NCBI GenBank assembly: GCA_048013815.1
Contig: CM106586.1
Span: 7,254,001-7,318,000 of the forward strand
Source of the DNA: Setoptus koraiensis
Lineage: Eukaryota > Animalia > Arthropoda
Reading direction: 5' to 3'
Length of the DNA: 64,000 nucleotides
A program made the translations under genes and the position numbers. Positions within the stretch are counted from its first letter, which is position 1. Every line of letters begins with the position of its first letter. This document shows, one piece after another, positions 3,001-47,519 of this stretch. The notes beneath the pieces are model-generated. The model was not told the origin of the DNA and did no database searches. It worked only from the letters and a program-made list of their open reading frames with translations.

Positions 3001-3240
3001 GTCGCTGCGCTCATTTATAAGTCGCCGGCGCTATAAGTTGCTGCCGCTACGAGTTGCCGGCGCTGTTGCCAGCCAACGATATTGGCGCGTTGCGGGCCCC
3101 GTTCGGGGCGCCCTCTCGAGCGTTCGCCATCAAGAGGTCGGCTGGAGCGGCGCTTGCCGTGCACAAACGAGTGGCCAGACTACTCGAGTGGCGCGCCTGA
3201 TTAAAGTGAACCTCTTTTATTTCTATATTTATCCGCTGAC

Positions 3241-3336
3241 CGTGTTTGTCCGCTGCCCGTGTTTGTCCGCTGTCCGTGCTATCCGCTGCCTGTGTTTGTC
3301 CGCTGCCCGTGTTGTCCGCTGTCCGTGTTTGTCCGC
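3241..3336. repeat. Minisatellite, about 17-bp unit (gtgtttgtccgctgccc), 5-6 degenerate copies
   Basis: Direct reading. Confidence 0.85.
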
Positions 3337-26700: not shown

Positions 26701-27147
26701 TTCGCTTCTCTGGTTCCGACCATGCCAGCCTCAAACAAAACCAATTCCGTCCAGCAATTGGAGCACGCTGCATCCAAATTGAGGCACGGGCGCAGCGGTC
26801 GAAAGTCGCCCATTTGGCCCTTTTGGTCCATTTAGGCGACTGGCAAATAAATCTAGCAAGTGGCGAACTATCAAGCGGCTCATCAATGAGCTAATCTTTA
26901 TCGCGCTTTAGCCAGTGTTTGTGTGTTATATAATTGAAATAGAAAGAAGGGCTACAATTGCGACCGACCAACAACACTGCCGCTATTCTATTTGGCGGCA
27001 AAGGTGAGAGCGTCGTTGTCTGTGCGTTAATTTAGTCGATGGTCTTATCAGAGGCTCGATATCTATCACATAATCTCAGGACTTGATCTAGGAGAAAAAC
27101 GAAAGAGCGACAAGATCCCCGCAATGAGATCGATGTATCTGTAATGT

Positions 27148-27148
<1 letters not shown>

Positions 27149-27185
<37 letters not shown>

Positions 27186-27189
27186 TCTC
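27149..27189. repeat. (CT)n microsatellite
   Basis: Direct reading. Confidence 0.9.
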
Positions 27190-30100
27190 GCCTGGTCGCT
27201 GTGATACAATGAGGGAGAGAACATGACTGGCTACAAAGATTGAAAGTGATAACTAATCTAGGACACATCCACCCACAGATAGGAAAAGAATAAAGACACA
27301 CGAGAGAGAAAACACGTACATAGCGTCTTATTGGCCTTTTTAGTGGCGCCGGCGACGGCGCAAGATTGCCCTCACAGCTCATGATACACCACGGGTCCAG
27401 GAGAACGCGCACTGGCTGGCCGGGATTTCACATGTATGCCGAGGGGAACGTGATGAGAAATTCTTCATCAAATTCGAGCGCCAGCTAGGAGCTTTCTTTT
27501 TTGTTTCTTCGCCGCTCAATACGCTTCCAACTGGCATAGACTAATCGACAACTGGGCAGGCGAGACGCACAACGATATGGAACGGAACAGAGCAAAGGAT
27601 CGGCGGAAAAGAGCGCCGCATCAGTTCGTTTCATTTCAGCTCATTGGCGGCCTATCGACGTCTAAACTAATGCCAACTTGCAATAGCGGGCCCAGAAATT
27701 CGCCACCAGCAACGGGCAAGAACTAATGCATCCGCAATGAAGTAAATAGTGTAATTTTGTTAGATTACTCAGTTTGGAACTACCGACGCTCCGACACCAG
27801 CCAGCAATATATATATATATATATATATCGAATAGCGAGAATGGAGATGGGGAGGAAGTGAGTGTCAACCGCAGAACAGTCACGATTTCATCAGATATCC
27901 ATTTAGATGGCGGCACACACACACACACCATCTAGCACCATCCTCAATTGTGTTGTTGTGCATTCTTATACTATAGAAAGAGCGGATATACACGGAAGCT
28001 GATCATGACAGAGATTCACTCTCTGATCTAAGACAAGTAAAAGTTTGTAATTGTCTCATAGGCCCCACTTTACCATGTGCGCACAGTATTGTGTGTCTGC
28101 TCAAGATTCTCGTGTATATGCTATACATACAGATATAAGAATGGCATACACAAAAAGAAGGGGAAGGGCAAAATATAAGAAGGCCCCACGAGAAACTCGA
28201 GAAATCCCAGAGAGGCAGATTCATTTGCCGTTGTTAGCCCTGTCATGGCGCAACAGGATACGCGCGAAGGATCTAGATCGTCGTATTTTGTCATGTATAA
28301 AATTCATTTCACTACTAACGGGATAAATAGATTGCTGCTTGCAAAGGGGTGAAACTTTTTCAACATAATTATATAACTCTGAAGATGATAATAATGATAA
28401 TAATAATACATGAATGTGGATGGCACCGAGTGAGATTGAGCTGCCCCTGAGAGCGCGTTGTTGTTTTTGTCAGCTAAATTAAACGTCAGTGAATGTCATT
28501 AGCAGGCGAATTAATTTTAATTAATTTTGCCATCACTACTACACTTAATTGTCGGTGCTCAACATTGCTGTGCGTCTGTAATGCTTCAGCGGCTGCAATT
28601 AGCATTGTCAGCCACTATTTGGGTTACATTTGCAACAAATCACGGTGGCCAATTCCGTGGGGGGCGGGGGCGGAAATAGCGCCGGCACACAAAGATCTGC
28701 TGTCTTGATTATATTGGCAGAGTCAAAGATATGTTTGTTTGGTGTAGCGTTCATGGGGCGCTGTTTGGGTTAGTTAGTTTAGACAGCAGCAATTCTTTTA
28801 TCTAAACTTGTACCTCATTGGTGCCGCGAGGCCGTGGCCCCATATTGCCGCTCAGTTGTCATTGTCGTTTTTCTTGATAATACTTGACTGAGCACAATGG
28901 CGCAATTATTGTGATGACAAGACTGGAGGGCCAATGTCGGCAGCGTGCGCGTCGCATGGTTCAAGATGACACGAGGCCAGCCACTACAGCAGAACAGCGA
29001 ATCTGGATCTCTACAAATATTGTCGGTTGTTTGAGCCACGGGCCAAATACGACGCTGACATACTGCGTCCGACTGCTTGAAAGAATCATAACTATTTTGG
29101 GGCTCGCCCACTGTATTTTGGGGCGCCGCGCTCGCTGTAGATAAACAACAACTTGCGCTGGCTAGACTGTGCGAGATTTTGAGTTGTTGTTTGTTGTCGA
29201 TGTCATTGTTATCGTGCCTCATGGTACTGCCAAAGTGCACAGTATATACACTCTAGTGGTAGTTGGGTTTTCGGTGAGAAGAAAAGAAGTCGCTGCTGCA
29301 AAAGATGGAGAATTATATTTATAATGCATTTCATCACATGCGAACAACAAAAGACAGCGCCATTTTTGAGTATTTGCTGCCGCTGCCGCTGCTGCTGGCT
29401 TGCCTTCTCAAATCGCACACTCGCTGGCTGCTGATAAATAAAAAGATGAGTGAATACAAATTGACAGTGATGATATGTCACATCATATCAGTTTGCCCAA
29501 AATGACATGCCCGGCTAGCGCTAGATGATGCTACTATGGCAACCTACTGCTGGCAATTGATCTGGCTTTTGAATTTATTTCATAAGATATCAACTACAAG
29601 CGGTGTAGTTCTCAAGAGTTGTAGTTGCTGTGATATGAGTGCCGCTGCTGCCAAATACTGCAAGGCAAACCGATTTACGTAACGGAAAGGAGTGGAGTGG
29701 AGTGTCCCATCATTAGAGTATAAGTTGAGAGTTGATGATACTCTGGCTGTCGCTGTCGCTTTTGCTGTTGTCGTTGTGTCTGTCTGCGTGTTGTGTGGCT
29801 GGCAAGTAGCTCGATATTGGTGGCCCTCTCAAGCGTTAGCGTCTGATGATTATGATGACATGCGATGATGATGGTAAATGAGACAAGATCGCTGCAATGT
29901 GCGCGATAACGGCCATCAGCCGACCAACAGCAGTGACAGCAGTGAACGTCGACGACCCTGAACACTGTTGCATAACAGTGGCCAGCCAATATTAGCCGTT
30001 TATTATTGCCGCTGCATAATAATAGCACAATTACTCAATTATAGCAGAATGCTGGCACGCTGATATAACTGAACTAATAGTATAATAACTAATAACAACG

Positions 30101-30235
30101 CAGTGCTGTAACATAATGTTGGCCAGATATCACAGGAGCCCGTGAGGCGAGAAACAACTTGTGTGCGAAACGCATCCAATGTTTTTAATGAAATATTCTG
30201 ATTGCGTCTATCTACAGACGCGCATATTGACTTAC

Positions 30236-30453
30236 CCAGGGCTGTCTGGCCCATGCTGGCCTGACCGTTTTGAAACATGATCCATAGGTCCACGACGCTT
30301 ACTATGAGTAGGTGCACAATTAACTTGTTGTTGCTGTTGTTTCTGTTCACAATGTTGCTTGGGCTTGCTGTTGGTCGGCTTGCGACAAACGGCCGCCTGT
30401 TTGTGTTGCGCCAATTCATTTTCTATCAATATCTTGCTATCAGCTTGATTCAT
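30236..30453 (-). CDS. Putative orphan first coding exon ending at a consensus GTAAGT donor (partner exons not found)
   Basis: Two ATG-initiated frames (30453 MNQADSK...QQQQQ...DSPG; 30419 MNWRN...LIVHLLIVSVVDLWIMFQNGQASMGQTALG) both run to CCTGG|GTAAGT at 30236/30235. No homology recognised. Confidence 0.3.
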
Positions 30454-30572
30454 TCATTTACCTGTTGTGTGGTTGCTTGCTTGACCACAGTCGACCATTG
30501 GCACTGGTAACTTTCGTTGATTGTCGTTGATTATTTAATTATGATCCATTCACTGTATCATCCTATTCTTAT

Positions 30573-30673
30573 TTGTATTTTGTATTTCGTATGTTGTATT
30601 TTGTATCTTGTATTTTGTATTTTGATATTTTATATCTTGTATTTCAAATTTCAAATTTCGTATCTTGTATTTT
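30573..30673. repeat. Degenerate heptamer repeat (TTGTATT)n
   Basis: ttgtattttgtatttcgtatgttgtattttgtatcttgtatttt... Confidence 0.85.
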
Positions 30674-33600
30674 GTGTGTTTGCGCTGGCTTGTCTTCTCG
30701 AACTCATTCAAATGGCGCTGCGCTCACGTTTGGGGTTCGCGTGGCGCCATAGCTGCCCGTCGATGATTCACTCATGTAGATCGTTAAATGAGTCACCTTC
30801 TTGATTGATTGAATTGATGTCTATTGTTGTCGTTGGTTTAGCTTTTTGTTGAAAGTCGCTATTGCATAATACGCATTTCGTCGAGCTTGATTTCTCACTC
30901 ACTTGATTAATTGTAACACTGGATATAATAATTGCACTGGTATCATATTAATTGATTTGATTTATTTGGTATTTTGGTAATTATGTAATTTCTAAAGTAA
31001 TTTGCAAACTGCATCTTAACAGGCCAACGCTAACTAACAATTGAATGAGCAGAGCAGAATGTTCAGCAATAATGTTCGAGTGTGTGTGTGTGCCGTCGAA
31101 CTAATGCAAACCGGATCGAACTCGCTGAATCGAACAATCGCCATGCATGTTGCACGAGCGCATGCGTTGTTTTGCAAATCGCAATTGGTGTGCGCGCAGT
31201 GCATGCGAATCGTGCGCGTTGTGCGCATTTATTCCATTCGGGACAACTCACACAGTGTGAGTCTCATGGTGTCACATGACGACCAACAACTTATGGGAGC
31301 GCAATCAATTTGTTCGAAACAACGCTCCAGCAAAATGGAACTTTCTTCATGATTCCATGCCGAAACTGCAGCCAAAATCGAACTTTCGTGGCAAAAAGCG
31401 AAAAATGCCACAAACCAGCCAAAACCAACCAAAAACTAGCGTGCTCACAAGCCGGATCAGCTGTTCCGTTTGATCAGCAGGGTGATGCCACGTCGATGTT
31501 GCCATGAATTCGATAATGTCATCCGGGGCCAATACCTGGAAATACCCGCGCCTGGAGCGGGGTGCTTGCTGGCCGCCGCTGGACTGCAATTGCTTGTGGG
31601 GCGGGGCAAGCCGCGGCTGGTGGTCCCAGATGAGTCGACCCACAGAGTCTTGGCTAAATAATAAATGAGCTAACGAACGTGCGCTTCTGTTTTGTTTTGT
31701 CTCATCGAAAACTCTCAACACGTTGAGCGGTGCAAGCGGTCGGCACGATTCATGGTGTGACTAATGGCAACATTGTTGCTGTATCAAGATAATGACGACC
31801 AACAGAGTAATGAATCACCTGTATGCTCGGCCACGGCGCAATCACAGTTGGCCGGCCTGGTAGCGAGCGGCCGTGATCGATGAGCTAGCCGCTCGCAGCA
31901 AACAATTAAATGCGCGCATTTGATTATGTTGTTGTCGCTTCAATGAATTGCCACAACTGGCCCGGCAACTACCACACGCAAGGTGGGTGATCTATGGCTC
32001 ACCGTTTGTCCGTGGCTCATAGCAACTCTCGCCGATGTTTGTTGTGGCAACGACCGCAGGTGGCAATGGCGCCGTGACCACTGCACCTGAGACAGTGAAC
32101 GCCGACTTGTGAGAAGGGCATCACCTAAAAAATAAATTCACTTCTTATCTCTGCAGTGTGTGTGCTGTAATCGCCAGCCATGATGCTCGTCGGCCACAGC
32201 ATTGTTCGCCCATTGCCAGTTGCGAAGCAAATCCGCAAATGTGAGCAAGTAAACAATGATGATGCAATTAGTTGGTCACTGCGAAGATGCCACTCATTTG
32301 CACTGTGTGCACTTGCCATTGATTAAGATTATCATTATTATTATTATTATTATTGCTATCATTATGACTTGCAATAATGATAGCAATAATAGCGCAGCTC
32401 GACAGAGCGACTCCCAACCGACTAGAGGCGAGATTCTAAGTCGGCAAAGCAAAGTCAAACTGTGCGCGATCTTGAATATTTAATGGCAAACAAACAAACA
32501 GTGGGTAATCAATTCAAAATAAGCATATATAATATTCATTAGCCGCACTATCAAATGTGCCGCGACGAGTGGACGTGATTGATTGTGCGCCCGGTGAAAC
32601 AACCGGTCTTAACCAGCAACCAATATATCCGATAAACAGAATAATATAATATCCGATGAATGGAGATATCGCTAATGATATTTGTATCATATCGCTCATG
32701 CTAATAGCACTTGTATTTTGTGGGTGGCACACACCACTATGTAAGCAAATATTGTCATGTTGATGATATATGATGGCATGATGCATTGCGTCTGGCTTGT
32801 TGGCTGGTGCGTCGTGAACATAAATTATGACAACAACAAGAGACGGCAATACGCAATCAATACACTTGCATCATTACTTGCTGCCCAACAGAGACGCCGA
32901 CAAGAGAATTGATGCTGCTGGGAACAGTTGCTCTGCTGCTGAATCACGTAACGACAATTCATACGACCATTATTAATAGATATAGATGGTAACGAGTTGT
33001 TGCAACTTGCAAGGGGAAAGAACTTGATTGAATCAACTGAAAAACAAGCTCCCTCAGTCACAGATTGTTGACAAGAGAATCGGCACCCACTTTAAGTGGT
33101 CTTGTCCCTGCGGCAAGCTTCTTGGAAGTTGGCTGCACCCATGGCCGACCCTGAGCCCACTTCTGACGAGAGTGCATTGCGACGCGTCTGAGACACTCCC
33201 TGTGAACGCTCGGCCCCTAGAATGGCCAACAATTAGCCTTGATCCCGCTGCAGACGATTCATGCGTTTTGTCGTGTCCGTCGTCGTCGTCGTCGTCGTCT
33301 ATCACGTCTGGCCCAATGGCATTGAGTCGATCATTTGACGACAACTCCGGTCCCAATTGTATCGATGATTGTGATCACGTCATTGAGGCAACGCGAAGCC
33401 CCCGCTCCCATGCCAGAAGGCACGTTAGGCTGTTGGGCCTCGTTGCACTGCCGCTGCCGGTTGCTCGCCCGATCTCACCCAATGTGCTCTGGTACTCTGG
33501 TGCCTTCTTCCGGACACTATGTTAACTCGCGTTGTGCCAACATGCGCGCTTGCACAAGTTGCCTCTGCCATACAGTTGTAGTTGACTAACGCTCTCGTCA

Positions 33601-36600
33601 GTTGAAGTTGGTGCGAACAACTTATCTATACTCTGTGTTTCGTGGGCAACAACTAATGAACATTGCGCAATCAGCGTTAATTAATATTCAGCGTATCATG
33701 CATCAATTATTCGGCACACACACACAAGGCAGTATATCGCATTATATTATTGCGATCATAGCGTCGCATAGAGTGTAGAGGTTGATTGCGGCGAACAGCA
33801 TCACAAGTAACATTCGTGGGAACACGAGTGCCTCCTATGGAGATGTAAATCTGACCACAGATAATTGTTCTCCACAAATGGAGGGCCTTTTCGGCGAGGG
33901 CAGCTGGCAGCGTTCGACATGTTGAGCGTGCTTGTAACTGTCTGACTGGCGCGCAGACACTGGGAACCTTGTCCAGGTCGTGCTTGCATCGAGGCGTTCA
34001 CAACTTGTGAGTCACAAGTTAATCGCAGCCCCTAAGAATCACGGCCGACGGATATTCTTGGACTCATAACTCGTCGCGACTCGCGCCGCGTTCTGACCGT
34101 TCGAATCGGGCGCTCTATGATGGCGCACTCTCACAGGTTATCTAACCACTTGCAGTAACAACCTTGATTCAAGATGATTGTGGCAGCAGTCAGTTACTTG
34201 GCGCATTTCGTAAGATTAACAAGACCATTGTAGCGACGGGACTTGTGACATACGAGCGGATCGCAACCATCGACGGCGAACAGAGGACGGGAGTCGTCTT
34301 GTCACACGACTCTTGCGTGAGGCTTGTATAAGTGCGAATACTCGAAAAATTATTCAATGGTGACAATTGGCAAAATTGATGATCGAGTCCCATTGTAGCG
34401 GGCAAAGTGAGGCTCCACATAAGAATCGACTTCGATTGGGCCCAAAGGAGTCAGTCAGCTCTCGTCTGGTTAGACCGTTGTCGGCTAACTGTATGTGAGA
34501 CTAGAACGCCATCTCTATTAGTGTTGCAATACCAACACACAACAACGGATCGTTGTTTATTGTGTGTTGCTGCATTTACAGTGTATTGCAATAAACAACA
34601 ACACTTGCCCGAAATATGGCGCACGTTGTGCCAGGCCCAGTTGTATTGGGGCCATATTGCGCGTCTCCGGCTAGACTGGCTGTTTGACTAAACCGGCTAA
34701 CGGTGCGACACAACATACAAACACGATGAAATAAGCATATCCAATTGGGCGCAACTGACTAAAGGTTCATTCATAACATATTTAACATAACTCTTGTGTC
34801 CCCCTTTGTCGCGCTAACTTATTCTTGCCGGCTATTCATCTGTCAAGACGCGCCTCACCAGCGGCTGCGAAAGCCCACAACTGCCTGCACTACATCAGTC
34901 GCAAGACGAGCACGTTTCGTCGGTCAATATGGCAAGACAGACAGAGAGAGAGAGAGAGAGAGGGAGCGTTATTGAAAGTATCCCAGATGACCAGAGTAAG
35001 TATTGCGGAGTATGAAGGGAGAAGGCGAACAAAGGCAGGCGCAAGCTGGCAGTGGCATGAAATGGAGTCAAGGTAGGGGCGTCATTGTGCCTGAGCAGTG
35101 GCGCCGCTGGCCTGGCCAATGATCGATCATGATAGCGGCCATATTCAAAATAGCAGCCAGCAAGCATCGACATTTCTCGTAAATGAGTTTCTCCGGACTC
35201 TGAAGTCTAGAGGCGCTGCTTCGAATATCTGGTGGTTTCGCGGACAACCTGTTCTCGGCGCAAATATCTGGCCGTCGGGTTGTCCGTTGCTGCTGGCTGC
35301 CTATGGGCCGCAACTTCCCCTGAGCGAGCTCAAACACTTTCAAGGCTGGCCACTTCTCGGGTGACAATCGCGCGATGCTCATCAACCAATTAGACAGCGA
35401 TAATGAATGCTCGCCAACACGAACAACCCCATATTGCTGGTGACGACACATCAGCGAGTGGGTGACGTCAAGTTGCTTTCAAAATTTGATTGGTTTATGT
35501 TGAGCGACAATCTTCATCGCGATTGCAAAAGCGTCAACAAGCGCTCGCCATTTGGCAATTTTGTTTGCACTGACTGTACAAGGTCGCCCGTTGTAACTCG
35601 TTGCGAAAGGGTTGAATTATCCGGATTGGATATGTTGACCGGCGTCGTTCGTTGTTGTTTGCCAAGCGCACAAATGTTGTATTTGTTCGAGGTGAAAAAA
35701 TCACTGGCAAGCTATTCATAACATATTTATTGATTTAGACGAAGATGCTCGAGGCGGCCGAGTAACTTTGCTGCGAAAAATCAATTTCGAAAAGTGCGCA
35801 AAGTTGGTGGTGCGCGCACACTGTCCGAATGCGCGGATACACCGTACCGAGTTGTGTAACCGTGTCCCGACTGTTGCGGGCACAAAACAGTTATGCACAA
35901 CGAAGAACCCGAGAGACGGTGATTCGCAAAATGTCGCAACTTGTATGATGGTGGCGATATATCCGCCAATATCTTGGACAGTTCCCTCGAGCTTATCGTG
36001 GAATTCAGCGATAGTTTTATCGGGCGGTTTTTCTGCGAACGCGGGGGTGGGCGCGGTCTGGAATGTCGGATACCCGCGCTCGCACGTTTCAGTACAGTGC
36101 AGTGTCGGTAAATAAAGTCACTTTTGCAGTATTGTACGAGCTGAGAACTCCAATACAGTTCAGAATTCGCTCCAAGAGCGTGTGAGCATGCGCAATGGTG
36201 GTGTTTTTCACCACTTTCAGCGAGTGGTGTAGCTCAAGAACGCAGATACAATCGAACACACGGACGCACATACACGTACTTAGGAACATATGTACAAACA
36301 GGCAAACGCACATACACGGAGGCACAGAATTGGGCAAGCTAACGTAGTGGAGGATCGCATCCTTTTCTAGTTGGTCATGTTCTCCTGAGGCACAGAACGT
36401 GCTATTCGCAACAAAATCGAACGCACGCAAAACCATGTTCAGTGGTGAAATGAATTGTAGATTCGTGCTCGCGAAACAGCCAAGTTACGTTATGTGCTGC
36501 CTGTGGCATAATTAGCACATTCACGATGCACATCACAACTCAAGTGTACTGTGTGAGTGTTTTCCCTTACTCATACACTTAGTTGGCGAAAAATCCGCCA

Positions 36601-36989
36601 GGGCGGCGTCGCACAGCTTTCTGCAGTGTCAGTGCGAGTGTGTGTGCACTATCAACTAACTCATGTACCAGCCCACATAAACAACATGAATAGCCCAGTG
36701 CAGTGGGTGACTCGCTAGAAAAACCTTCGCTTCATTACTCAATAATGACGACTATAAACTGTATCAGTGAAAACGAATCAACTCCGTACTCGTACTCGCT
36801 GGCGCTTGTTTCTCTCCGCTGCTTGGGAGCGCCTCTAGTGCGACTCGACCAAACTAAGTTTGCATACGGTGGAAATATATCACACAGAATGCAAACACTT
36901 TATAGCGTAGTGCATTGGTTCACCAACACCTCCAAGGACCCTGTGACTTGTTTACATCTTTCGTGTGTACTGATGAAGAAAGCGAGCAC

Positions 36990-37095
36990 TATTATTATTA
37001 TTATTATTATTACTATTATTATTACTATTATCATCATTATTATTATTATTATCATCATTCTTTAGTAATATTATTATTATCATTGTTATTATTAT
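36990..37095. repeat. (TAT)n/(CAT)n microsatellite in the putative unk 5' UTR
   Basis: Direct reading, immediately upstream of ATG 37104. Confidence 0.9.
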
Positions 37096-37103
37096 CGTTG
37101 GAC

Positions 37104-40100
37104 ATGAATAATAGTGAAGCTTCTAAACGATTTAACTCAGCGACACCTGGAACATCGCCTCCGCAGGGTCTGAATTGCTCACAAGATTCTAACAATAGTA
37201 TTAATAGTAACAAATGTCTCGCAAATAAGACAGAAAAAGCCAATCACTATCATTACCTTAAAGGGTTTAGAGTCGAACAATGCGCACAATTTCTCCAGCA
37301 TAAATGCACTAATCACAAACCATTCACGTGTTTTGATTGGCACTTCATGAATCAGAGGAGGCGAAGGCCAGTACGAAAGCGAGATGGAACATTCAATTAT
37401 TCACCAGATACTTATTGCACCAAGTATGACGAAACCACAGGTGTATGTCCCGAGAAAGACGAATGTCCTTATCTTCATCGAACGGCAGGGGATACAGAGC
37501 GGCGATATCACTTGCGCTATTATAAAACTGGCATTTGCGTTTATGATACAGACCCAAGAGGCTACTGTGTCAAGAATGGCCAACATTGTGCTTTCGCTCA
37601 TGGATCGCATGATCTTAGGAATCCTGTCTACGATGTTAAAGAATTACAAAGCATGAGTGCCAATGGCCAAACCGAAGATGTCTCCGATCCGACAGCTATG
37701 CTTCTTAACGCCGGTCCAGCCAATGTTGAGCGCGAGCGAAATGCACTTAATGAAGATCCCAGGTGGAACGAAACAGCCTATGTGCTGGCTAATTATAAAA
37801 CTGAACTGTGTAAACGACCTCCAAGGTTATGTAGACAAGGTTATGCATGTCCTCAGTATCACAATGGTAAAGACCGCAGAAGAACTCCAAAAAGATTTAA
37901 ATATAGATCCACTCCATGTCCCAATACAAAACAAGGCGACGAATGGGGAGATCCCGCAAGTTGTGAACAGGGAGAGTCTTGTCCTTATTGTCATACTAGG
38001 ACCGAGCAACAATTTCATCCTGAGATATATAAATCAACCAAGTGTAATGACATGCAGCAATCTGGATATTGCCCGCGTGGTCCATTTTGTGCTTTCGCAC
38101 ACAACGAGGACGAGATGGTCGCAACTAGGGATATAGATTTAGATTTAGTAGACACAGATACACCTGCAAACCAATTCCTTAAAAGTAACGTTGAAGATCA
38201 GGAAGAATCCAATTTGATCGCTATTAGTCCTCCAAACTGTCATGGCCCCATTGCACGGCCTAGGTCTTACTCTCACTCTCATGCACCCAACGATATCCGT
38301 CATAGCAGTGTCCATTCTATCCTAACAGATCAACGATTTCAGAATGGAATATTAGAGTCAACCAAATGCAGCGAAATCCAAAGTTCGAGTTTTGATCCTC
38401 GCAATCCATTCTGTGTTTTCTCCCACAATGACGAGGACCTGACAAGTAGAAACATCGATTTAGACGATATTGTGAAGGAAACGCCTGCCCAGCATTCACT
38501 TAGAGCACAACTAGAAGAAAGTAATTCTCCTATCTTGAGACCCACTGCCACTCCAACAAATAACCTTGGTCCTATTGCTCGACCGCGATCTTATTCTCAC
38601 TCCCACGCTCGCATGATTGGGGGATTTGGCAGCTTGCACGCGGCCATAGTTGAGCGATCGGGTTTACTAGATGATTCTAAATTAATTAGTGGCACATCCG
38701 GATTGCCAGATCATCAGTCGTTGCTGAATTCCGACAAGTTGCAATCATCGATATCAGCTTCATTTTACTCGACCTCTTCTAACGCTTCTAATTCTCTGAT
38801 AGATCGTGAACTAGCTAATGCTAGCAATTTATTCAGTAATATAGAAAATAATCAAAATCAATCTAGCAACATGTTAAATCAAGATACCTTGAGGAATTGC
38901 TTGAGGAACGAGGAGTCCGAGGCACCCATCACATCTGTACTTAGTTTGGAAGACATAGATTTAGTCAACAGGACTGTTGATCTGGTGAGCAAAAGTGAGA
39001 TGAATTTAGGATTGTCAGGAGCATTGGTCATGAATAGTAATGAAACTTCAAAAAGATTCAACTCAGATACTCCCAGAACATCAGGTTCTCAAAGCGCAAC
39101 CTGTTCTTCGCAAGATTCTACTAATACCATTAGTAATAAGAATCTTGCTAATAAGACAGAGAAGGCCAATCACTATCATTACCTTAAAGGGTTTAGAGTC
39201 GAACAATGCGCACAATTTCTCCAGCATAAATGCACTAATCACAAACCATTCACTTGTTTTGATTGGCACTTCATGAATCAGAGGAGGCGAAGGCCAGTGC
39301 GAAAGCGAGATGGAACATTCAATTATTCACCAGATACTTATTGCACCAAGTATGACGAAACCACAGGTGTATGTCCCGAGAAAGACGAATGTCCTTATCT
39401 TCATCGAACGGCAGGGGATACAGAGCGGCGATATCACTTGCGCTATTATAAAACTGGCATTTGCGTTTACGATACAGACCCAAGAGGCTACTGTGTCAAG
39501 AATGGCCAACATTGTGCTTTCGCTCATGGATCGCATGATCTTAGGAATCCTGTCTACGATGTTAAAGAATTACAAAGCATGAGTGCTAATGGCCAAACCG
39601 AAGATGTCTCCGATCCGACAGCTATGCTTCTTAACGCCGGTCCAGCCAATGTTGAGCGCGAGCGAAATGCACTTAATGAAGATCCCAGGTGGAACGAAAC
39701 AGCCTATGTGCTGGCTAATTATAAAACTGAACTGTGTAAACGACCTCCAAGGTTATGTAGACAAGGTTATGCATGTCCTCAGTATCACAACGGTAAAGAC
39801 CGCAGAAGAACTCCAAAAAGATTCAAATATAGATCCACTCCATGTCCCAATACAAAACAAGGCGACGAATGGGGAGATCCCGCAAGTTGTGAGCAGGGAG
39901 AGTCTTGTCCTTATTGTCATACTAGGACCGAGCAACAATTTCATCCTGAGATATATAAATCAACCAAGTGTAATGACATGCAGCAATCTGGATATTGCCC
40001 GCGTGGTCCATTTTGTGCTTTCGCACACAACGAGGACGAGATGGTCGCAACTAGGGATATAGATTTAGATTTAGTAGACACAGATACACCTGCAAACCAA

Positions 40101-40770
40101 TTCCTTAAAAGTAACGTTGAAGATCAGGAAGAATCCAATTTGATCGCTATTAGTCCTCCAAACTGTCATGGCCCCATTGCACGGCCTAGGTCTTACTCTC
40201 ACTCTCATGCACCCAACGATATCCGTCATAGCAGTGTCCATTCTATCCTAACAGATCAACGATTTCAGAATGGAATATTAGAGTCAACCAAATGCAGCGA
40301 AATCCAAAGTTCGAGTTTTGATCCTCGCAATCCATTCTGTGTTTTCTCCCACAATGACGAGGACCTGACAAGTAGAAACATCGATTTAGACGATATTGTG
40401 AAGGAAACGCCTGCCCAGCATTCACTTAGAGCACAACTAGAAGAAAGTAATTCTCCTATCTTGAGACCCACTGCCACTCCAACAAATAACCTTGGTCCTA
40501 TTGCTCGACCGCGATCTTATTCTCACTCCCACGCTCGCATGATCGAGGGATTCAGTAGCTTGCATGCGGCCATAGTTGAGAGATCGGGTTTACTAGATGA
40601 TTCTAAATTAATTAGTGGCACATCCGGATTGCCAGACCATCAATCGTTGCTGAATTCCGACAAGTTGCAATCATCGATATCAGCTTCATTTTACTCGACC
40701 TCTCCTAATGCTTCGAACTCACTGATTGATAGAGAATTGGCAAGTTCTAGTAATTTGTTCACATCATTGA
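37104..40770 (+). repeat. Head-to-tail tandem duplication, period 1926 bp (copy 1 37104-39029, copy 2 from 39030)
   Basis: ATG 37104 vs ATG 39030, and the paired small ORFs in the track (37384/39310, 37657/39583, 38317/40243), are all offset by 1926. The core is near-identical and both ends are diverged. Confidence 0.97.
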
Positions 40771-40826
40771 GAAAACACAATTCATCCACTGATGGTGACA
40801 TGCTGAATCAGAGTAATCTTAACTAA
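37104..40826 (+). CDS. unk: Unkempt-family CCCH zinc-finger RNA-binding protein, internally duplicated (2 x ZF cluster), no RING; 1240 aa, intronless
   Basis: The translation has the diagnostic Unkempt N-terminal block (HYHYLKGFRVEQC...CFDWHFMNQRRRRP...YSPDTYCTKYDETTGVCP...CPYLHRTAGDTERRYHLRYYKTGIC...CAFAHG...NYKTELCKRPPRLCRQGYACPQYHN...KYRSTPCP...CHTRTEQQFHPEIYKSTKCNDMQQSGYCPRGPFCAFAH) twice. The first ATG is at 37104 (gacATGaat). The ORF-track start at 36915 is a TTG upstream of a TAT microsatellite. Stop TAA at 40824-40826. Confidence 0.93.
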   Translation: MNNSEASKRFNSATPGTSPPQGLNCSQDSNNSINSNKCLANKTEKANHYHYLKGFRVEQCAQFLQHKCTNHKPFTCFDWHFMNQRRRRPVRKRDGTFNYSPDTYCTKYDETTGVCPEKDECPYLHRTAGDTERRYHLRYYKTGICVYDTDPRGYCVKNGQHCAFAHGSHDLRNPVYDVKELQSMSANGQTEDVSDPTAMLLNAGPANVERERNALNEDPRWNETAYVLANYKTELCKRPPRLCRQGYACPQYHNGKDRRRTPKRFKYRSTPCPNTKQGDEWGDPASCEQGESCPYCHTRTEQQFHPEIYKSTKCNDMQQSGYCPRGPFCAFAHNEDEMVATRDIDLDLVDTDTPANQFLKSNVEDQEESNLIAISPPNCHGPIARPRSYSHSHAPNDIRHSSVHSILTDQRFQNGILESTKCSEIQSSSFDPRNPFCVFSHNDEDLTSRNIDLDDIVKETPAQHSLRAQLEESNSPILRPTATPTNNLGPIARPRSYSHSHARMIGGFGSLHAAIVERSGLLDDSKLISGTSGLPDHQSLLNSDKLQSSISASFYSTSSNASNSLIDRELANASNLFSNIENNQNQSSNMLNQDTLRNCLRNEESEAPITSVLSLEDIDLVNRTVDLVSKSEMNLGLSGALVMNSNETSKRFNSDTPRTSGSQSATCSSQDSTNTISNKNLANKTEKANHYHYLKGFRVEQCAQFLQHKCTNHKPFTCFDWHFMNQRRRRPVRKRDGTFNYSPDTYCTKYDETTGVCPEKDECPYLHRTAGDTERRYHLRYYKTGICVYDTDPRGYCVKNGQHCAFAHGSHDLRNPVYDVKELQSMSANGQTEDVSDPTAMLLNAGPANVERERNALNEDPRWNETAYVLANYKTELCKRPPRLCRQGYACPQYHNGKDRRRTPKRFKYRSTPCPNTKQGDEWGDPASCEQGESCPYCHTRTEQQFHPEIYKSTKCNDMQQSGYCPRGPFCAFAHNEDEMVATRDIDLDLVDTDTPANQFLKSNVEDQEESNLIAISPPNCHGPIARPRSYSHSHAPNDIRHSSVHSILTDQRFQNGILESTKCSEIQSSSFDPRNPFCVFSHNDEDLTSRNIDLDDIVKETPAQHSLRAQLEESNSPILRPTATPTNNLGPIARPRSYSHSHARMIEGFSSLHAAIVERSGLLDDSKLISGTSGLPDHQSLLNSDKLQSSISASFYSTSPNASNSLIDRELASSSNLFTSLRKHNSSTDGDMLNQSNLN

Positions 40827-40829
40827 TAT

Positions 40830-40901
40830 ATTAAAAGTAACAAATTGATTAAATCAAAAAATAGTTCCACCAAAGACTACTGTCTGTTTATTTTCTTTAT
40901 T
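40830..40901. terminator. Back-to-back polyadenylation signals for convergent unk (+; ATTAAA at 40830 and 40848) and Phox2 (-; AATAAA at 40887-40892 and 40896-40901)
   Basis: Hexamers seen directly in the 141-bp gap between the two stop codons. Their use is inferred. Confidence 0.5.
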
Positions 40902-40967
40902 ACCGCTATCCGTACATCTAATCTTATCTGGTGTTTGATGTGGTGCTCCAAAGTTTACTGTGGCCTC

Positions 40968-41204
40968 TCAATCTACTTCCTCTTTCTTTTCTGTGAATCT
41001 CTTACTTTTGGGGAATGGTGATTTGGAAGTTAGTTCAATGTTGGTCGTGATTGAATTTGCAATGGCATTTTGATTGGACACAGCGATGCTAGTGCTATTG
41101 TGGTCATTTATTGTGGTGGTGTTTGCCGGCGATGATGATGTAATATCATTTTCATTTGTTTTCTCTATCTTACGAAACTTTGCCCTCCGATTCTGAAACC
41201 AGAC
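40968..41204 (-). CDS. Phox2: Phox2 coding exon 2: helix 3 of the homeodomain plus short C-terminus (VWFQNRRAKFRKIEK...KKEEVD*, 78 aa); full protein about 829 aa
   Basis: Not in the ORF track. Read by hand on the minus strand: pyrimidine tract ctgtctctgttgtattccttgtgtag|GTC TGG TTT CAG AAT CGG AGG GCA AAG TTT CGT AAG, open to TGA at 40968-40970. It joins exon 1 in phase 0 at the canonical PRD-class codon 46/47 position and gives a Q50 homeodomain. Confidence 0.92.
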   Translation of the reverse strand, partial: VWFQNRRAKFRKIEKTNENDITSSSPANTTTINDHNSTSIAVSNQNAIANSITTNIELTSKSPFPKSKRFTEKKEEVD

Positions 41205-44200
41205 CTACACAAGGAATACAACAGAGACAGTAAGATGAAATTATTAGCCATAGTAGTAACATAGATTAATTTTGTGCCCTTGAGCGACGACGAGTGCTAA
41301 GCGACGTTCAAAAGGGAGCAGAGTATGGAGAGCAACCGAAATAGTTGATTGATATATAATAATGTTAGTTAACACTCATTGAAGGAGAAGGCTCGCCTAT
41401 GAATAATTAACAAGTGCAAGTTGAGTGTGTGTGAAATCTAGCATGAAGACATTTGCGGCAATTAAGAACCCAGCGGCCCTATATGTTGCCCTATATTGTT
41501 TGCGCGATCGCTTTCTGGTGATGGCCTGATGATAGTCACTACTATTGCATAAGAGTAGTGTATCAGGGATCAAGATTGAAGCATTAGCTAGAACTCAAGA
41601 CTTGAGTCACCATCAGGTGAGTAATTTGGCCTGTCGAGTTCATCGGTTGGCGCATGCATGAGCCGACCCCGGACTATCAATTGGTGCATTGAATTGCTGA
41701 TCGAAATTGATTCATCGTAACGGGCATGCCGAAACGGAAATCAATATTCTAAAGAATATGTGAGGCCAAGAACATACAACAGCGATAACAGTGAGAGTGT
41801 TGGGTGAGTTACGTGAGAGATCGGTGGTGTGGTAATATCGCTTTATATTGATTGCGATCGCTGGCGGTCACAGCATAAGGCTACATGAGCGCCGCCATGG
41901 TGCTATATGGGGCTACATGCTTCAGGGTGCTTTGGGGGGATGTGTCTCGCATAGGTAGCCTGCAGTATGTTGTTGTGTGGCAATTGCTGTTATGTAAGGT
42001 TATGTAAGTTAGCGGTGGTGCCGCCGCCGCCCAATTCTATTTGCAATTATATTAATCACCATGTGGGGGGCTGGGGGTGCTACTACTTACACTAGAGACA
42101 AGTAGCAGTGGCAAAAGTAGTGGCTTTTAGTTACTTATAGTGCAATCATGCAGATCAAGTGAGAAGCTGAGCTAGCTTCTTGCGTTCGCGTTCGCGTTCG
42201 CGACCGCCAGCCGACTAGGCACATAGCGACCGATTGGTGGCAGCTGACACGGCGACTAACGACAACAATATGCATGATAATGCTAACCAGATGGCCCGAC
42301 CATCCTTCTTCGTTTGCGGGGCCCCTCGGTCCGCTTATTTATGCATCCCATTATAACTGTCTGCCGGTGCTGTGTCTGTTTGCGCGCTGTTGTTTGTGCT
42401 GTCTGGTGGTTGCTGGTGGTCGTCGGTTGTTGTCGGTTGTTGTCGGTTGCTGTCGGTTGTTGTTGCGCCGTTGTTGCGCTTCCTGGCGGCCTACAACATA
42501 TACAACATTTACACATGAAGCATATATGTACACATAGAGACCACTTAATGGATGCAAGATCGCCAGCGAGCACACCCTTTTCTTGCGGTCATCATTAATG
42601 CGCGAATATATCAAATTGTAGCGCCGCCACTAGTTATAAAATGGCCAGCATGTTGTTTATATAGGCTAGAGGCCGGTAACAAGTTTACAGGCCGGCTCGC
42701 CAGTCAGCCAGCGAGCCGGTTGAGTCACGGAAAGTCAGTGGGTTGAGTGTGCCGGCCACGGGTAGTCAGCGGGTTGAGTGCGCCGGCCACGGGTAGTCAG
42801 CGGGTTATCAGTGGGTAGTTGGCGCGCGATTAAGATGATTAGCACTGGAAATGGCTTACAATCAGTTGAGTGCGGCCGGCGCGGGCGTCTCGGCTCGGCT
42901 CGGGTTGGCCTTCGAGCACCTTTGGCGGTTGCTGTAGGCACCATACCCGGCGCGGCTGCAAGCAACGGGACTCGTGCACTTGTGTAGCTGCAAACAAAGG
43001 TCGTGTCAGTTGGCGATGGCGAGAACGCAAGCGACGCAAACGACGAGCTGCACAACGTGATGTGCCAGCGATCAAATTATCCGACAAGTGTCGTCTGAGT
43101 TTTTGCACTTGTCAGATTTTTGGCTCCTCAGCGGCTTTTGGACTTTTAGTGGAGCGCGTTTCCCGTTCCGCGTTTGCCTGCGTTGCCCTTTGGCTGGCGC
43201 TCGCGACAGCCCCCAACTAGCGATCCGCGAGTGGCGCTGCCGGGCCGGCCCAAACTCATCAAGTGACGACTTGAACACTCAGCCAGCAGACCCCGTTGGC
43301 TGGATGTCACCAGAGCGAGCGCGACAGCGATCAGCCGCGACAGCGACAACGACAGCAGCAACGACAACGACGGCAGCAACGACGACGACGGCAGCAACGA
43401 CAACGACAGCAACAACAGCAACGACGGCAACAACAACAACAAAGACAACAGTTTAGGTAGGCTAAACTGGCGGTTACGGCGCCGCGAGCACAAGTGCAGC
43501 GGACATGGTTGTCGCGATGTCATTGCCGCTGTCATTGATGGGTCAAGCCAGTCGCCGATTCGCTCCGGACAAGCGGACGGGGCGCGCGGAGAGCGGGGGC
43601 CCGTTCGCGAGTGCGGCTCGGAGCGCCGGTCCGAGTTGCTCGGGTTTGCAGTTGGCAGGTTGATGTGGTCGCCGCGACGGCCCCATATAGATTCAAACTG
43701 GCTTGCGTTTGGGCTGTTCGCTGGTTCTGGCTTCGGTGGCCCAATTGCTGGCTCCCGCGCCCCGTATTCCCTAATGGATTTGGCTGTTCAACAAATGAGC
43801 CAGAACTGGTTTTGTTGTGGCTCATTCGCCGCGGTGAATTGCCACCAAACAGCACCGACCAACCAAACCAACGAACGGGCTCCTCAGCGGCGGCGGCGGC
43901 AACCTGGCTGTTTCAGGCGGCTCGGTTCTGTCGGAGGGCCCCGCCGATAGAACTGGGCAGAAGCGGGTCGCTGCTGGCAGGCCGACAGCGTCGTCGGGCG
44001 ATCGTCAGGCGGCCATGACTAGCGGAGCATGCTGCGTCGGGCTTTTGCACTTGTTTCTGGGCTGTCGGCGCCGCTGTTTGTTTACGGCGACACAGTGACT
44101 GCGTTTAGTTTTGGACCGGCCGCGGAACGGGGCCCGCCGACAACTGGCGACCGCCGACAACTAGCGACCGCACACGGGCGACGAGCAGCCACGTCAGCCG

Positions 44201-44786: not shown

Positions 44787-45266
44787 TTGCTGCTGTTGTT
44801 GTTCCGCTACTGGCCGCCACTGGCCGCCACTAGGCGCCACAATGTTTGCCTGCATTATAATCACCATAATCCATCGATCGCGGGCCCTAATAACTGGCGC
44901 AAATCGCGCTGCGACTTGTCAGTGTCAGTGTCATCATCGCATGACACACACACGCACAACATTACGCAACGCCAACGTGCCGCGTTGCGCCCCACAAAAC
45001 AACCACTGACACATCAGCAGCGCCAGTCGATGATGACGGCGGCGGCGGCGGCGATGACGCAACGCTTATTGTGCCGGCGCAATAACGCACAATGATGCAC
45101 ACATTATACACAATAAACTGGCTGAAATTATTGCGCAATCATTGCGCCACTGTTGCGACACAATACGATTCTATAACCAATTCTCTCGAACTCTCCGGTA
45201 ATTGACGCAATCAGCGCGATCGCTCGCAACAAAACGACCGCTCGCCACGAGGCGACAAACACTCAC
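41205..45266 (-). other. Phox2 homeobox intron (4062 bp, GT-AG)
   Basis: Bounded by GTGAGT and gtgtag. It contains CAA/CGA and TGT/TGC triplet tracts and no conserved ORF. Confidence 0.88.
44741..44801. repeat. (TGT/TGC)n triplet repeat in the Phox2 intron
   Basis: Direct reading. Confidence 0.9.
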
Positions 45267-46341
45267 CTGCACGCGCGCCTCGGTCAGGTCGGTGCGACTG
45301 GCGATCTCCTCGCGGGTGTAAATGTCGGGATAGTGCGTCTCTTGGAAGGCCTTCTCTAGATCCTGCAATTGCAAATTGGTGAACGTGGTGCGAATGCGCC
45401 GCTGTTTGCGCTTCTCGGCCGCGGACGAGCTCGCAGAGCAGCTATTGTTGCTGTTGTTGTTGTTGTTGTTGGAGCTATTATTGCCAGAATTGTTTAAATT
45501 GTTGCTGTTCTTGGCCTGGCGCGAACAATTCCTCTTTTTGGCCGTCTTGGTGCGCCTCTTCGACCGCGCGCACCTGATCTGGTGGGCAGCGGCACCACTT
45601 CCGGTGCTGCTGGCCAGTTTGTGCGTGTCCGTCTCGTCGTCCTCTTCGTCGGCGCTGCTAGTGACACTGGTGGCGCCCAGCAAACTGCCGCTGTTGCTGG
45701 TGTCCTCTATTAGGTGCTCGTCTGTCAGAAGCACAATGTTGGTCGCGTCACTGCTCAAGTTGGCACCGTTACTTGTCAGCAAATTGTCCGCCAAGATACA
45801 ATTCAAATTTTTGCGACAGCTCACATCTCGGTGATGTTGATGATTGCGCAACTGCGCCAATGAATCCGCACCGGCCAGATCGCTGGTGCTCAGCGAATCG
45901 GCGCCAGGCGGCACTGCTGTTCTCAGGCTGGCACTCACCTTGAACGCTGCCGGTCGCTGGTGTTGTTGCTGTTGTTGTTGTTGTTGTTGTTGAATGGTGT
46001 CCGCGTATGCGGCAAACCGGCGATGATTGTCAAAGTCCAACACTGACACAGACGACACTGACGAGTCGGTCAGTTCGTCCGTCACTTGACTCTGATTGTC
46101 GGCACAATACAGCATCTGTTCATAGTGACCGTTATTGTGACCGCAGACAGCCTGCTGACAGCCCGCAGCACCGTTGCACGCCATCAGCTGACTGCCCGCC
46201 GCTGCTGACCTGCTGTTAAGTGACACAACTGACAGGCCTGTCAAATGCTCGTCAGCTGTTGGCTGTGGGTTCTGTTTTGGCTGGTGCTGTTGTGCAGCGT
46301 GCGCCACGAGTGCACCTGTCGCCGTGTTGTGATGCTGCTGC

Positions 46342-46423
<82 letters not shown>

Positions 46424-46425
46424 GC

Positions 46426-46504
<79 letters not shown>

Positions 46505-47519
46505 GGGATAGCTGCGATACTTGTGACTGTGCGATTTGGTTGGAGGGGCAAAATTGTTGTTGTTGCCAGTGCTGCTGGCTGGCCTCTTGCGCAATAACTG
46601 GCTGGTTGTTGGTGTCTTGAGTGCTGCTGTGCTGCATGTAGTGGTGGTAGTTGTCCTGTTGTTGCTGTCTGCCGTCCACGTGCGCAATGGGCGCGTGCTG
46701 GTGCACCGTTGGTGCTGCAATTTGGGCTTGGTGATCCAGGTGACCGTTGCAAGGGGCCTGTTGATGGTGCTGCTGATGGTGCTGGTGCTGATGATGGTTC
46801 TGGTGCGAGAAGGCTGTTGCGACGGCAACCAGCGCCGCTTGCTCGACCAGCGCCGACTGGTGATCGCGCGGATCAGCGTTATATGAGTGAGCGAGCTGGT
46901 GGCCTGTTGCTGGCTCTTGCTGTTGCTGGTAACCCGTCAGCTGATGACTGAACTCGGCTTCGAGGTGACACTGCTGGTTGAACTGGTTGTGCTGCTGGTG
47001 CTGCTGCTCGTGATGATGGTGCTCGTTGGGGTGACGCGATTGGTGGGCGCTGTTGGCCAGTAGGTGGTGCTGCTGCGGCTGATGGTGTCCCGTTAGATGG
47101 TAGCTGTCAGCGCTGTCAGCTGTGTGTGCAACGGTCTGTTGTTGTGGCATGAAGCAGGCCGATTGGTTAGGCGCTTGTTGCCGGTAATTGTTGGCTAGTT
47201 TTGTTTGTTGTTCATTGCTGTTGTTATTGTCTGCTGTGCTGTTGCTATTGTTGTTGTTGTCGTGGCCAATTGTCTGATAATGATGCAATGACGACATGTT
47301 GTTGCTTATTACGTAATGATGATGATGATGACTATAGGCCGCCGCTGGTTGTGTCATAACGCTCACTGGTGCGCAATTGGCGCTGTTGGCCGCTAGTGTG
47401 TGTGTCATCATGTTGGCCGCAATTAGTTTATCTGGCAGATCCAAAACTGTGGAAATACTGTTAGTCGACGTATTGTTATAGTTTGAGTGACCGACGCTGC
47501 AACTGCTGGTCATGCTCAT
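45267..47519 (-). CDS. Phox2: Phox2/PHDP-type paired-like homeobox gene, coding exon 1 (751 codons; His/Gln/Asn-rich N-terminus plus homeodomain residues 1-46)
   Basis: [49 protein letters not shown] matches the PHOX2 homeodomain (RRIRTTFT signature). It ends at a consensus donor CAG|GTGAGT (45267/45266). ATG at 47517-47519. Confidence 0.9.
46335..46505 (-). repeat. Coding poly-glutamine tract, 57 Gln: (CAA)26 CAG (CAA)27 (CAG)3
   Basis: Counted directly from the TTG/CTG run on the + strand, in frame with the Phox2 ORF. Confidence 0.93.

What the first reader, a model, noticed from the sequence alone, without database searches (positions are those of the whole stretch)
37104..40826. Double Unkempt: whole-gene tandem duplication fused in frame into one protein with two complete CCCH clusters
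Seen: two 642-codon-period units in one uninterrupted ORF. The end of copy 1 reads through (...EESEAPITSVLSLEDIDLVNRTVDLVSKSEMNLGLSGALV-MNSNETSKRF) into the former start of copy 2. All the core differences I found between the copies are synonymous: ACG/ACT, GTA/GTG, TAT/TAC, GCC/GCT, AAT/AAC, TTT/TTC, GAA/GAG and GAA AAA/GAG AAG. Established: Unkempt normally has one cluster of six CCCH fingers that binds UAG and U-rich RNA elements and controls translation and neuronal morphology. Inference: a protein with about 12 fingers could bridge two RNA sites or two mRNAs. The purely silent divergence suggests both halves are under purifying selection rather than being an assembly artefact.
Basis: partly seen in the sequence, partly recalled or inferred. 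Interest (0 to 1): 0.8.

Follow-up and report, generated by a model that had tools for sequence, protein, structure and literature searches.

The report
Double Unkempt gene in mites
This mite and at least two distantly related mites carry two RNA-binding Unkempt units joined head to tail in one reading frame, without the tail part that normally pairs Unkempt into a dimer, so one chain may do the work of the usual pair; no RNA or protein evidence was obtained.

Summary
ORF 37104-40826 (+, 1240 aa from the first ATG) contains two Unkempt units with a 1926-nt (642-codon) period. Each unit has all six CCCH fingers.

It is real DNA. Short-read contigs from two other public runs cross the junction between the units without a difference.

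It is not a one-off. Two other mite contigs at the same locus (same homeobox neighbour) also read two units through in one frame: L001 (871 aa) and L005 (1290 aa). Both differ from the window by about 28% in DNA.

Both units are under purifying selection:
- Finger core: 11 silent and 0 replacement differences in the window, 14 of 15 silent in L001.
- Divergence is very uneven (dS about 0.06 in the core, saturated in the first 47 codons), which indicates an old duplication homogenised by gene conversion.

In all three species the only poly(A) hexamers lie just after the final stop. In L005 the second unit has lost its start codon.

No RING or coiled coil is encoded at the locus; a convergent homeobox gene ends 140 nt away.

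Best reading: one protein with two RNA-binding modules on a disordered linker, possibly replacing the coiled-coil dimer of ordinary Unkempt.

No RNA evidence was obtained; the two RNA runs tried gave no reads.

The parts
37104..40826 (+). Complete double-Unkempt coding sequence: 1240 codons plus stop at 40824-40826, with no internal stop.
37104..37247 (+). N-terminal disordered region of unit 1. Its counterpart in unit 2 is 39030-39173. The two are old and diverged: about 78% nt identity, 3 indels, dN 0.16, dS saturated.
37245..38102 (+). RNA-binding module 1: CCCH fingers 1-6, aa 48-333.
37968..38615 (+). 648-nt tract with zero differences from unit 2 (39894-40541), read as a recent gene-conversion tract. 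P about 8e-7 under a uniform rate. It contains the internal duplication.
38358..38609 (+). Internal duplicate of 38034-38285: a degenerate seventh finger (second Cys lost) plus a second GPIARPRSYSHSHA motif. The same is present in unit 2 at 40284-40535. Absent from L001 and L005.
38836..39023 (+). Single-copy junction: the tail of unit 1, missing from unit 2. It holds the conserved Unkempt tail motif PITSVLSLEDIDL (38925-38963) and a donor-like CTG|GTGAGC at 38982-38990.
39030..39032 (+). Former start codon of unit 2, now codon 643 of the ORF.
39171..40028 (+). RNA-binding module 2: fingers 1-6 of unit 2, protein-identical to module 1.
40762..40826 (+). Short diverged tail of unit 2 and the stop codon.
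40830..40853 (+). Two ATTAAA hexamers (40830, 40848). These are the only AATAAA/ATTAAA hexamers on the + strand between 36900 and 41300.
40968..41204 (-). Last exon of a convergent paired-like homeobox gene (VWFQNRRAKFRK...). It bounds the Unkempt gene and leaves no room for further Unkempt exons.

Best explanation
An old in-frame tandem duplication of a RING-less, coiled-coil-less Unkempt gene is kept as a single gene in a clade of mites. It is transcribed from upstream of 37104 to the poly(A) signals just after 40826. It is translated as one chain: six-finger RNA-binding module, disordered region with conserved short motifs, then a second identical six-finger module.

The two modules are kept alike by recurrent gene conversion or unequal exchange, and both are under purifying selection.

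Shown: the DNA arrangement, its conservation in three species, selection on both units, and the absence of the C-terminal module at the locus.

Inferred: a single transcript and a single protein.

Further inference: ordinary Unkempt works as an obligate coiled-coil homodimer that brings two RNA-binding domains together (PMC11009413). The covalent doubling may therefore replace the lost dimerisation domain, letting one chain bind two UAG/U-rich sites on one mRNA or on two.
For: Real DNA:
- The X2 contig covers 38748-39194 across the junction with 0 differences.
- The X7 contig closes on itself after 1926 nt, as a tandem repeat does in a de Bruijn graph.
- 15 runs in 7 studies hold the stretch.

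Conserved:
- L001 (ORF 1078-3693, period 1590) and L005 (ORF 2557-6429, period 2061) are syntenic double-unit ORFs.
- The junction is colinear between L001 and L005.
- All three periods are multiples of three.

Selection: 27 silent against 5 replacement codons in the window. Finger core dN 0 and dS 0.06; L001 dN 0.001 and dS 0.066.

Old, with conversion:
- dS in the N-terminal region is saturated, next to a 648-nt tract with no differences.
- The two units cluster within each species in all three species.

One transcript and one protein:
- No AATAAA/ATTAAA anywhere in the ORFs; one lies 1-38 nt after the final stop in each of the three species.
- In L005 the unit-2 start is ATC, and there is no in-frame Met from aa 614 to 1077.
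- The same tail sequence lying outside the ORF (L001 700-1078, L003 3500-3819) is riddled with stops.

No C-terminal module: tblastn, a motif scan and a 60-sequence HMM find no coiled coil or RING in the window or in L001, L002, L003 or L005. The homeobox stop lies 140 nt from the Unkempt stop.

Dimer requirement of canonical UNK.
Against: - No RNA or protein evidence. RNA runs X16 and X19 laid 0 reads, which is no test.
- The window keeps an ATG at the former unit-2 start, so an internal promoter could give a separate 598-aa product.
- A donor-like site sits in the junction (38982-38990).
- Contigs L002 and L003 carry one unit only, so the doubling is not indispensable, unless those contigs are assembly collapses.
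- Whether the genome has a second, canonical unkempt with a coiled coil elsewhere could not be checked.
- A shared origin of the window's junction with that of L001/L005 is likely but not proven.
Confidence: 0.65

Rival explanations
1. Two products from one locus. An internal promoter, or reinitiation in the junction, gives a separate unit-2 protein, in addition to or instead of the fusion. The open frame across the junction would then be incidental.
For: The ATG is retained at 39030 in the window. L001 keeps a Met just before module 2. A donor-like CTG|GTGAGC lies in the junction; tiny 25- or 34-nt excisions from it would shift the frame into a TGA that overlaps the unit-2 ATG (my reading).
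Against: - Unit 1 would have no stop codon and no poly(A) signal of its own in any of the three species.
- L005 has lost the unit-2 start and has no Met for 117 codons before module 2.
- Introns of 25-34 nt are too short for animal splicing.
- The periods stay multiples of three in all three species.
Confidence: 0.17
2. Separate, recent and largely neutral duplications arose in each lineage and happen to be in frame. They are transient copy-number variants with no role for the fusion as such.
For: The units cluster within each species. Copies are 98-99.9% alike. The second unit ends at a different point in each species. Single-unit contigs exist (L002, L003). X2 depths hint at variable copy number.
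Against: - The junction is colinear between L001 and L005.
- Decayed tail relics lie upstream in L001 and L003.
- dS is saturated in the window's N-terminal region.
- Three independent in-frame events in the same gene are improbable.
- The single-unit contigs lack the conserved tail motifs that unit 1 of every double gene keeps.
Confidence: 0.12
3. Assembly artefact: two haplotypes or a collapsed/expanded repeat placed in tandem.
For: The copies are nearly identical, and depths in X2 are uneven.
Against: - The junction sequence is present with 0 differences in independent short-read contigs of two other runs.
- The unique 188-nt linker and the diverged 5' ends are not what stitched alleles look like.
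- Two other species show the same layout.
Confidence: 0.02

Closest known systems
Canonical Unkempt / UNK and UNKL (Drosophila unk, mammalian UNK)
   Same: Same six CCCH fingers in two clusters of three: Pfam PF18384, PF25427, PF23035, PF23261 and PF00642, with E 9e-78 and 3e-67 to structures 5ELH and 5ELK. A disordered region follows, with the conserved GPIARPRSYS motif and a tail motif that aligns with the canonical V-x3-[VI]-x6-L helix region.
   Different: No coiled coil and no RING at the locus. Two complete finger modules sit in one chain. Canonical UNK instead brings two modules together by coiled-coil homodimerisation (PMC11009413).
Polyubiquitin genes (head-to-tail in-frame coding repeats under concerted evolution; from general knowledge)
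   Same: Whole coding units joined in frame without a stop. The units are kept nearly identical within a species, with mostly silent differences. Copy number changes by unequal exchange.
   Different: Polyubiquitin is cleaved into monomers by dedicated proteases. Nothing suggests cleavage here. The units here are about 640 codons long and joined by a unique linker, and the second unit is truncated.
Other mite unkempt genes (Dinothrombium P0005, Halotydeus P0006, Tetranychus P0011, oribatid P0004/P0008/P0017)
   Same: 62-76% identity over the finger region.
   Different: These are single-unit genes with a coiled-coil tail; some chelicerate relatives also have a RING. They form a separate clade, 100/100 support. 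Unkempt was reported absent from the eriophyoid Aculops lycopersici (PMC7738191).

Membership tests
Unkempt (UNK/UNKL) RNA-binding proteins | Six CCCH zinc fingers arranged as two clusters of three | tested here: met
   All five Unkempt finger Pfam families are above their cut-offs in each half. Cys/His columns are invariant in alignment A1.
Unkempt (UNK/UNKL) RNA-binding proteins | Sequence homology to the solved Unkempt finger structures | tested here: met
   5ELH E 9.1e-78 and 5ELK E 2.5e-67.
Unkempt (UNK/UNKL) RNA-binding proteins | Disordered region with conserved effector-binding short motifs | tested here: inconclusive
   The GPIARPRSYS motif is present (four copies in the window). A tail motif in the junction aligns with the canonical VESVVG..L.DL region in three pairwise alignments. 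BLAST does not find it significant, and the human residue numbering could not be mapped.
Unkempt (UNK/UNKL) RNA-binding proteins | C-terminal coiled coil that makes the homodimer | tested here: not met
   No hit of canonical C-termini by tblastn or by a 60-sequence HMM on all six frames of the window, L001, L002, L003 and L005. The gene is bounded by a convergent homeobox exon. The rest of the genome was not searchable.
Unkempt (UNK/UNKL) RNA-binding proteins | C-terminal RING finger | tested here: not met
   No PF13920 hit, no RING pattern in any frame of the window, and no HMM hit. Other acariform mite Unkempts (P0005, P0006, P0011) also lack a RING hit.
Unkempt (UNK/UNKL) RNA-binding proteins | Binding of UAG plus U/A-rich RNA and translational repression | not testable with these tools
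   Inferred only, from about 75-80% identity to the mouse fingers.
Concertedly evolving in-frame tandem coding repeats (polyubiquitin-like gene organisation) | Units join in frame with no stop, and repeats are more alike within a species than between species | tested here: met
   One ORF in three species. Units pair within each species with 95-97% bootstrap support.
Concertedly evolving in-frame tandem coding repeats (polyubiquitin-like gene organisation) | Mosaic divergence showing conversion tracts | tested here: met
   dS is saturated in codons 1-47, 0.06 in the fingers and 0.12 in the disordered region, with a 648-nt tract free of differences.

The most novel reading that the evidence does not exclude
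An RNA-binding protein that normally must dimerise through a coiled coil has lost that domain in a mite clade and replaced it with a covalent 'single-chain dimer'. The two six-finger modules sit on one disordered tether. They have been kept in frame and homogenised by gene conversion over a span long enough to saturate silent sites between species. This would be a natural experiment on why Unkempt needs two RNA-binding domains.
Probability: 0.35. Interest if true: 0.78.

Novelty: new variant of a known kind. Interest (0 to 1): 0.62.

Why it matters
Work on human UNK shows that dimerisation is essential for its activity, and proposes that the dimer's two RNA-binding domains bind one or two mRNAs (PMC11009413). 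A lineage that discards the coiled coil and RING but doubles the RNA-binding module in one chain tests that model. If the fusion is expressed, it argues that the paired RNA-binding domains are the selected feature, not the coiled coil or the RING.

It is also a clean case of concerted evolution between the halves of a single large gene.

It qualifies the published statement that unkempt is lost in eriophyoid mites, if this genome is one of them. Earlier scan notes say so; I did not test it.

Tried and rejected
1. RNA evidence. The two raw RNA runs offered (X16, X19, 'same species label as X7') laid 0 reads, so nothing can be said about expression.

2. Downstream Unkempt exons. A conserved ~110-nt element with third-base variation lies downstream of unit 2 in four species and looked like a C-terminal exon. 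On the minus strand it reads VWFQNRRAKFRK, so it is the last exon of the neighbouring homeobox gene.

3. RING and coiled coil. Not found by tblastn, regular expressions or an HMM.

4. Other double Unkempts. A full-length word search over proteins of 683-2170 aa found only P0001, scoring about twice the bits of every other hit. The metagenome scan added L005. I did not run the large representative search, because one search already covers the question.

5. An intron in the junction. The donor-like site has only AGs 25 or 34 nt away and no downstream exon to join, so I rejected it as unlikely. It remains untested.

6. L002 and L003 as evidence for a single-unit ancestor. Both look like the head of unit 1 joined to the end of unit 2. 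They lack the conserved tail, or carry it only as a decayed relic upstream. I read them as secondary or assembly collapses, but this is not decided.

7. Mapping the junction motif onto human SLiM 1. Only the spacing fits, and I had no human sequence to align, so it stays a lead.
Full report
**Observation**

The window has one uninterrupted ORF from 36915 to 40826 on the + strand. The first in-frame ATG is at 37104, giving 1240 codons. A direct repeat with a period of 1926 nt (642 codons) fills it: 37098-38835 matches 39024-40761.
- The core is 1619 nt with 35 mismatches.
- The first ~120 nt of the units are only about 78% alike and carry three small indels.
- 188 nt (38836-39023) occur only once and form the junction.
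- Unit 1 reads straight into the ATG of unit 2 at 39030.

Both halves hit every Unkempt finger family of Pfam above its cut-off. Both match the solved Unkempt finger structures 5ELH and 5ELK at E 9e-78 and 3e-67.

Over 539 aligned codons, 27 differing codons are silent and 5 are replacements. In the fingers the count is 11 to 0.

**Is it real DNA?**

Fifteen public runs in seven studies hold the stretch. I laid reads on 38650-41900, a stretch chosen so that it holds no long internal repeat.
- Run X2 gave a 447-nt contig covering 38748-39194. That is the end of unit 1, the whole junction and the start of unit 2, with no difference.
- Run X7 gave a 1944-nt contig that returns to its own start after 1926 nt, passing through the junction. 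A tandem repeat looks like this in a de Bruijn graph.

Haplotypes stitched in tandem by an assembler would not leave this junction in independent short reads.

X2 word depths are 28 for the junction, 73 for the shared core and 14 for the downstream flank. That is not the 1:2:1 of a clean two-unit array. I leave it unexplained; it could mean more units in that strain or a half-depth heterozygous flank.

**Relatives**

The closest protein in the large collection, P0001, is itself a double Unkempt. Its contig L001 is an ENA metagenome scaffold.
- One ORF, 1078-3693, holds two units with a period of 1590 nt.
- The units are 98.6% alike over 967 nt.
- A homeobox gene follows on the opposite strand and matches window 45261-45433, so the loci are orthologous.

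A scan of JGI metagenomes gave L005.
- One 1290-aa ORF, 2557-6429, has a period of 2061 nt.
- The units are 99.9% alike over 1802 nt.
- The same homeobox neighbour follows.

These contigs differ from the window by about 28% in finger DNA and from each other by 22%. Silent sites between them are saturated.

A full-length search over proteins of 683-2170 aa found no other double Unkempt.

In trees the mite sequences form their own clade (100/100 support), and the two units pair within each species.

**One origin or several**

The tail, junction and start of unit 2 align colinearly between L001 and L005, so these two share one junction.

L001 (700-1078) and L003 (3500-3819) carry, upstream of their first unit, a copy of the same tail sequence that is full of stops. 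This shows two things: the array has gained and lost units, and the sequence decays when it lies outside the frame.

In the window, silent divergence between the units is very uneven:
- saturated in the first 47 codons (dN 0.16);
- 0.06 in the fingers;
- 0.12 in the disordered part;
- nil over 648 nt (P about 8e-7 under a uniform rate).

That tract holds an internal duplication specific to the window's lineage: a degenerate seventh finger and a second GPIARPRSYSHSHA motif.

The simplest account is an old duplication with repeated gene conversion. Whether the window's junction is the same event as that of L001 and L005 is likely but not proven.

Contigs L002 and L003 have a single unit. It looks like the head of unit 1 joined to the end of unit 2. 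I cannot say whether that is a real collapse or an assembly collapse.

**Gene limits**

No coiled coil or RING is encoded anywhere in the window or in the related loci. This was tested by tblastn with full-length mite and chelicerate Unkempts, by a pattern scan and by a profile of 60 canonical C-termini on all six frames.

A conserved element downstream of unit 2 turned out to be the last exon of the convergent paired-like homeobox gene (41204-40968, minus strand). Its stop lies 140 nt from the Unkempt stop.

From the start codon to 600 nt past the stop, the only AATAAA or ATTAAA hexamers lie just after the final stop:
- 4 and 22 nt after it in the window;
- 1 nt after it in L001;
- 38 nt after it in L005.

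There are none in any junction. About four would be expected by composition in the window's ORF.

**One protein or two**

No RNA could be examined; runs X16 and X19 laid no reads, which is no test. The case for one protein is comparative:
- The frame is open across the junction in three species separated by saturated silent divergence.
- The three periods (1926, 1590, 2061) are all multiples of three.
- Unit 1 has no stop and no poly(A) signal of its own.
- In L005 the former start of unit 2 reads ATC, and there is no in-frame Met between residues 614 and 1077, while module 2 spans 731-1021.
- In L001 the older start position reads Ala.
- The homologous sequence outside the frame has decayed.

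Against it:
- The window keeps the ATG at 39030.
- A donor-like CTG|GTGAGC sits at 38982-38990. Its nearest AGs are only 25 and 34 nt away, and there is no downstream exon to join.

I put about 0.65 on a single fused product as the main form.

**Mechanism**

Canonical UNK is an exclusive homodimer held by a C-terminal coiled coil. A monomeric mutant loses the morphogenetic activity, and the dimer is proposed to bring two RNA-binding domains onto the same or different mRNAs. Short motifs in the disordered region recruit CCR4-NOT and PABPC (PMC11009413).

The mite gene has no coiled coil but has two RNA-binding modules in one chain. They are separated by about 350 residues of disordered sequence that keeps conserved motifs.

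In all three species the second unit is cut short at a different place. What is conserved is module, disordered region, module.

I therefore propose that the covalent doubling stands in for dimerisation. This step is inference; I give it about 0.35.

The junction motif PITSVLSLEDIDL aligns with the canonical tail motif and fits the V-x3-I-x6-L spacing of the human CCR4-NOT-binding helix. I could not align the human protein, so this is only a lead.

**Comparison and novelty**

By its fingers the protein is a member of the Unkempt family. It fails the coiled-coil and RING features at this locus.

The gene organisation resembles polyubiquitin: in-frame units under concerted evolution. There is no sign of cleavage here.

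The literature search found no description of a doubled Unkempt. The one paper that mentions unkempt in eriophyoid mites reports it absent from Aculops lycopersici (PMC7738191). Earlier scan notes call this genome eriophyoid; I did not test that.

I rate it a new variant of a known kind, with interest 0.62. It would rise if a transcript or protein spanning the junction is shown.

Noticed in passing
window 40968-41204 and ~45200-47519, minus strand: A paired-like homeobox gene convergent with Unkempt. A long first exon with polyQ runs ends at ...TEARVQ|GTGAGT. A GC-rich intron of about 4 kb follows, then a last exon starting VWFQNRRAKFRK. AATAAA on its strand lies at 40887 and 40896. The same neighbour is seen in L001, L002 and L005.
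   Followed up: partly
window 38034-38285 / 38358-38609 and 39960-40211 / 40284-40535: Each unit carries an internal ~84-aa duplication: finger 6 to GPIARPRSYSHSHA, then a degenerate seventh finger lacking the second Cys with a second copy of the motif. The repeats are about 45% identical in protein. Absent from L001 and L005.
   Followed up: partly
window 36985-37095: A (TAT/ATT)n microsatellite runs up to a few bases before the start codon, and the frame stays open through it back to 36915.
   Followed up: no
L001 700-1078; L003 3500-3819: A stop-riddled relic of the unit tail and junction sequence lies upstream of the first unit. It suggests a decayed third unit, or past unequal exchange.
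   Followed up: partly
window 38650-41900 in run X2: Contig word depths are 28 (junction), 73 (shared core) and 14 (downstream flank). This does not fit a simple two-unit array and may reflect copy-number variation between strains.
   Followed up: no
window 26000-42000 against its flanks: G+C drops from 55-60% to 42-49% across the region that holds Unkempt, then rises again from 42001, inside the homeobox intron.
   Followed up: no
L009 769-1493; L006-L008: Other metagenome relatives. L009 has a ~390-nt intron inside the finger region. L006-L008 are 52% identical single-unit relatives from another organism group.
   Followed up: no
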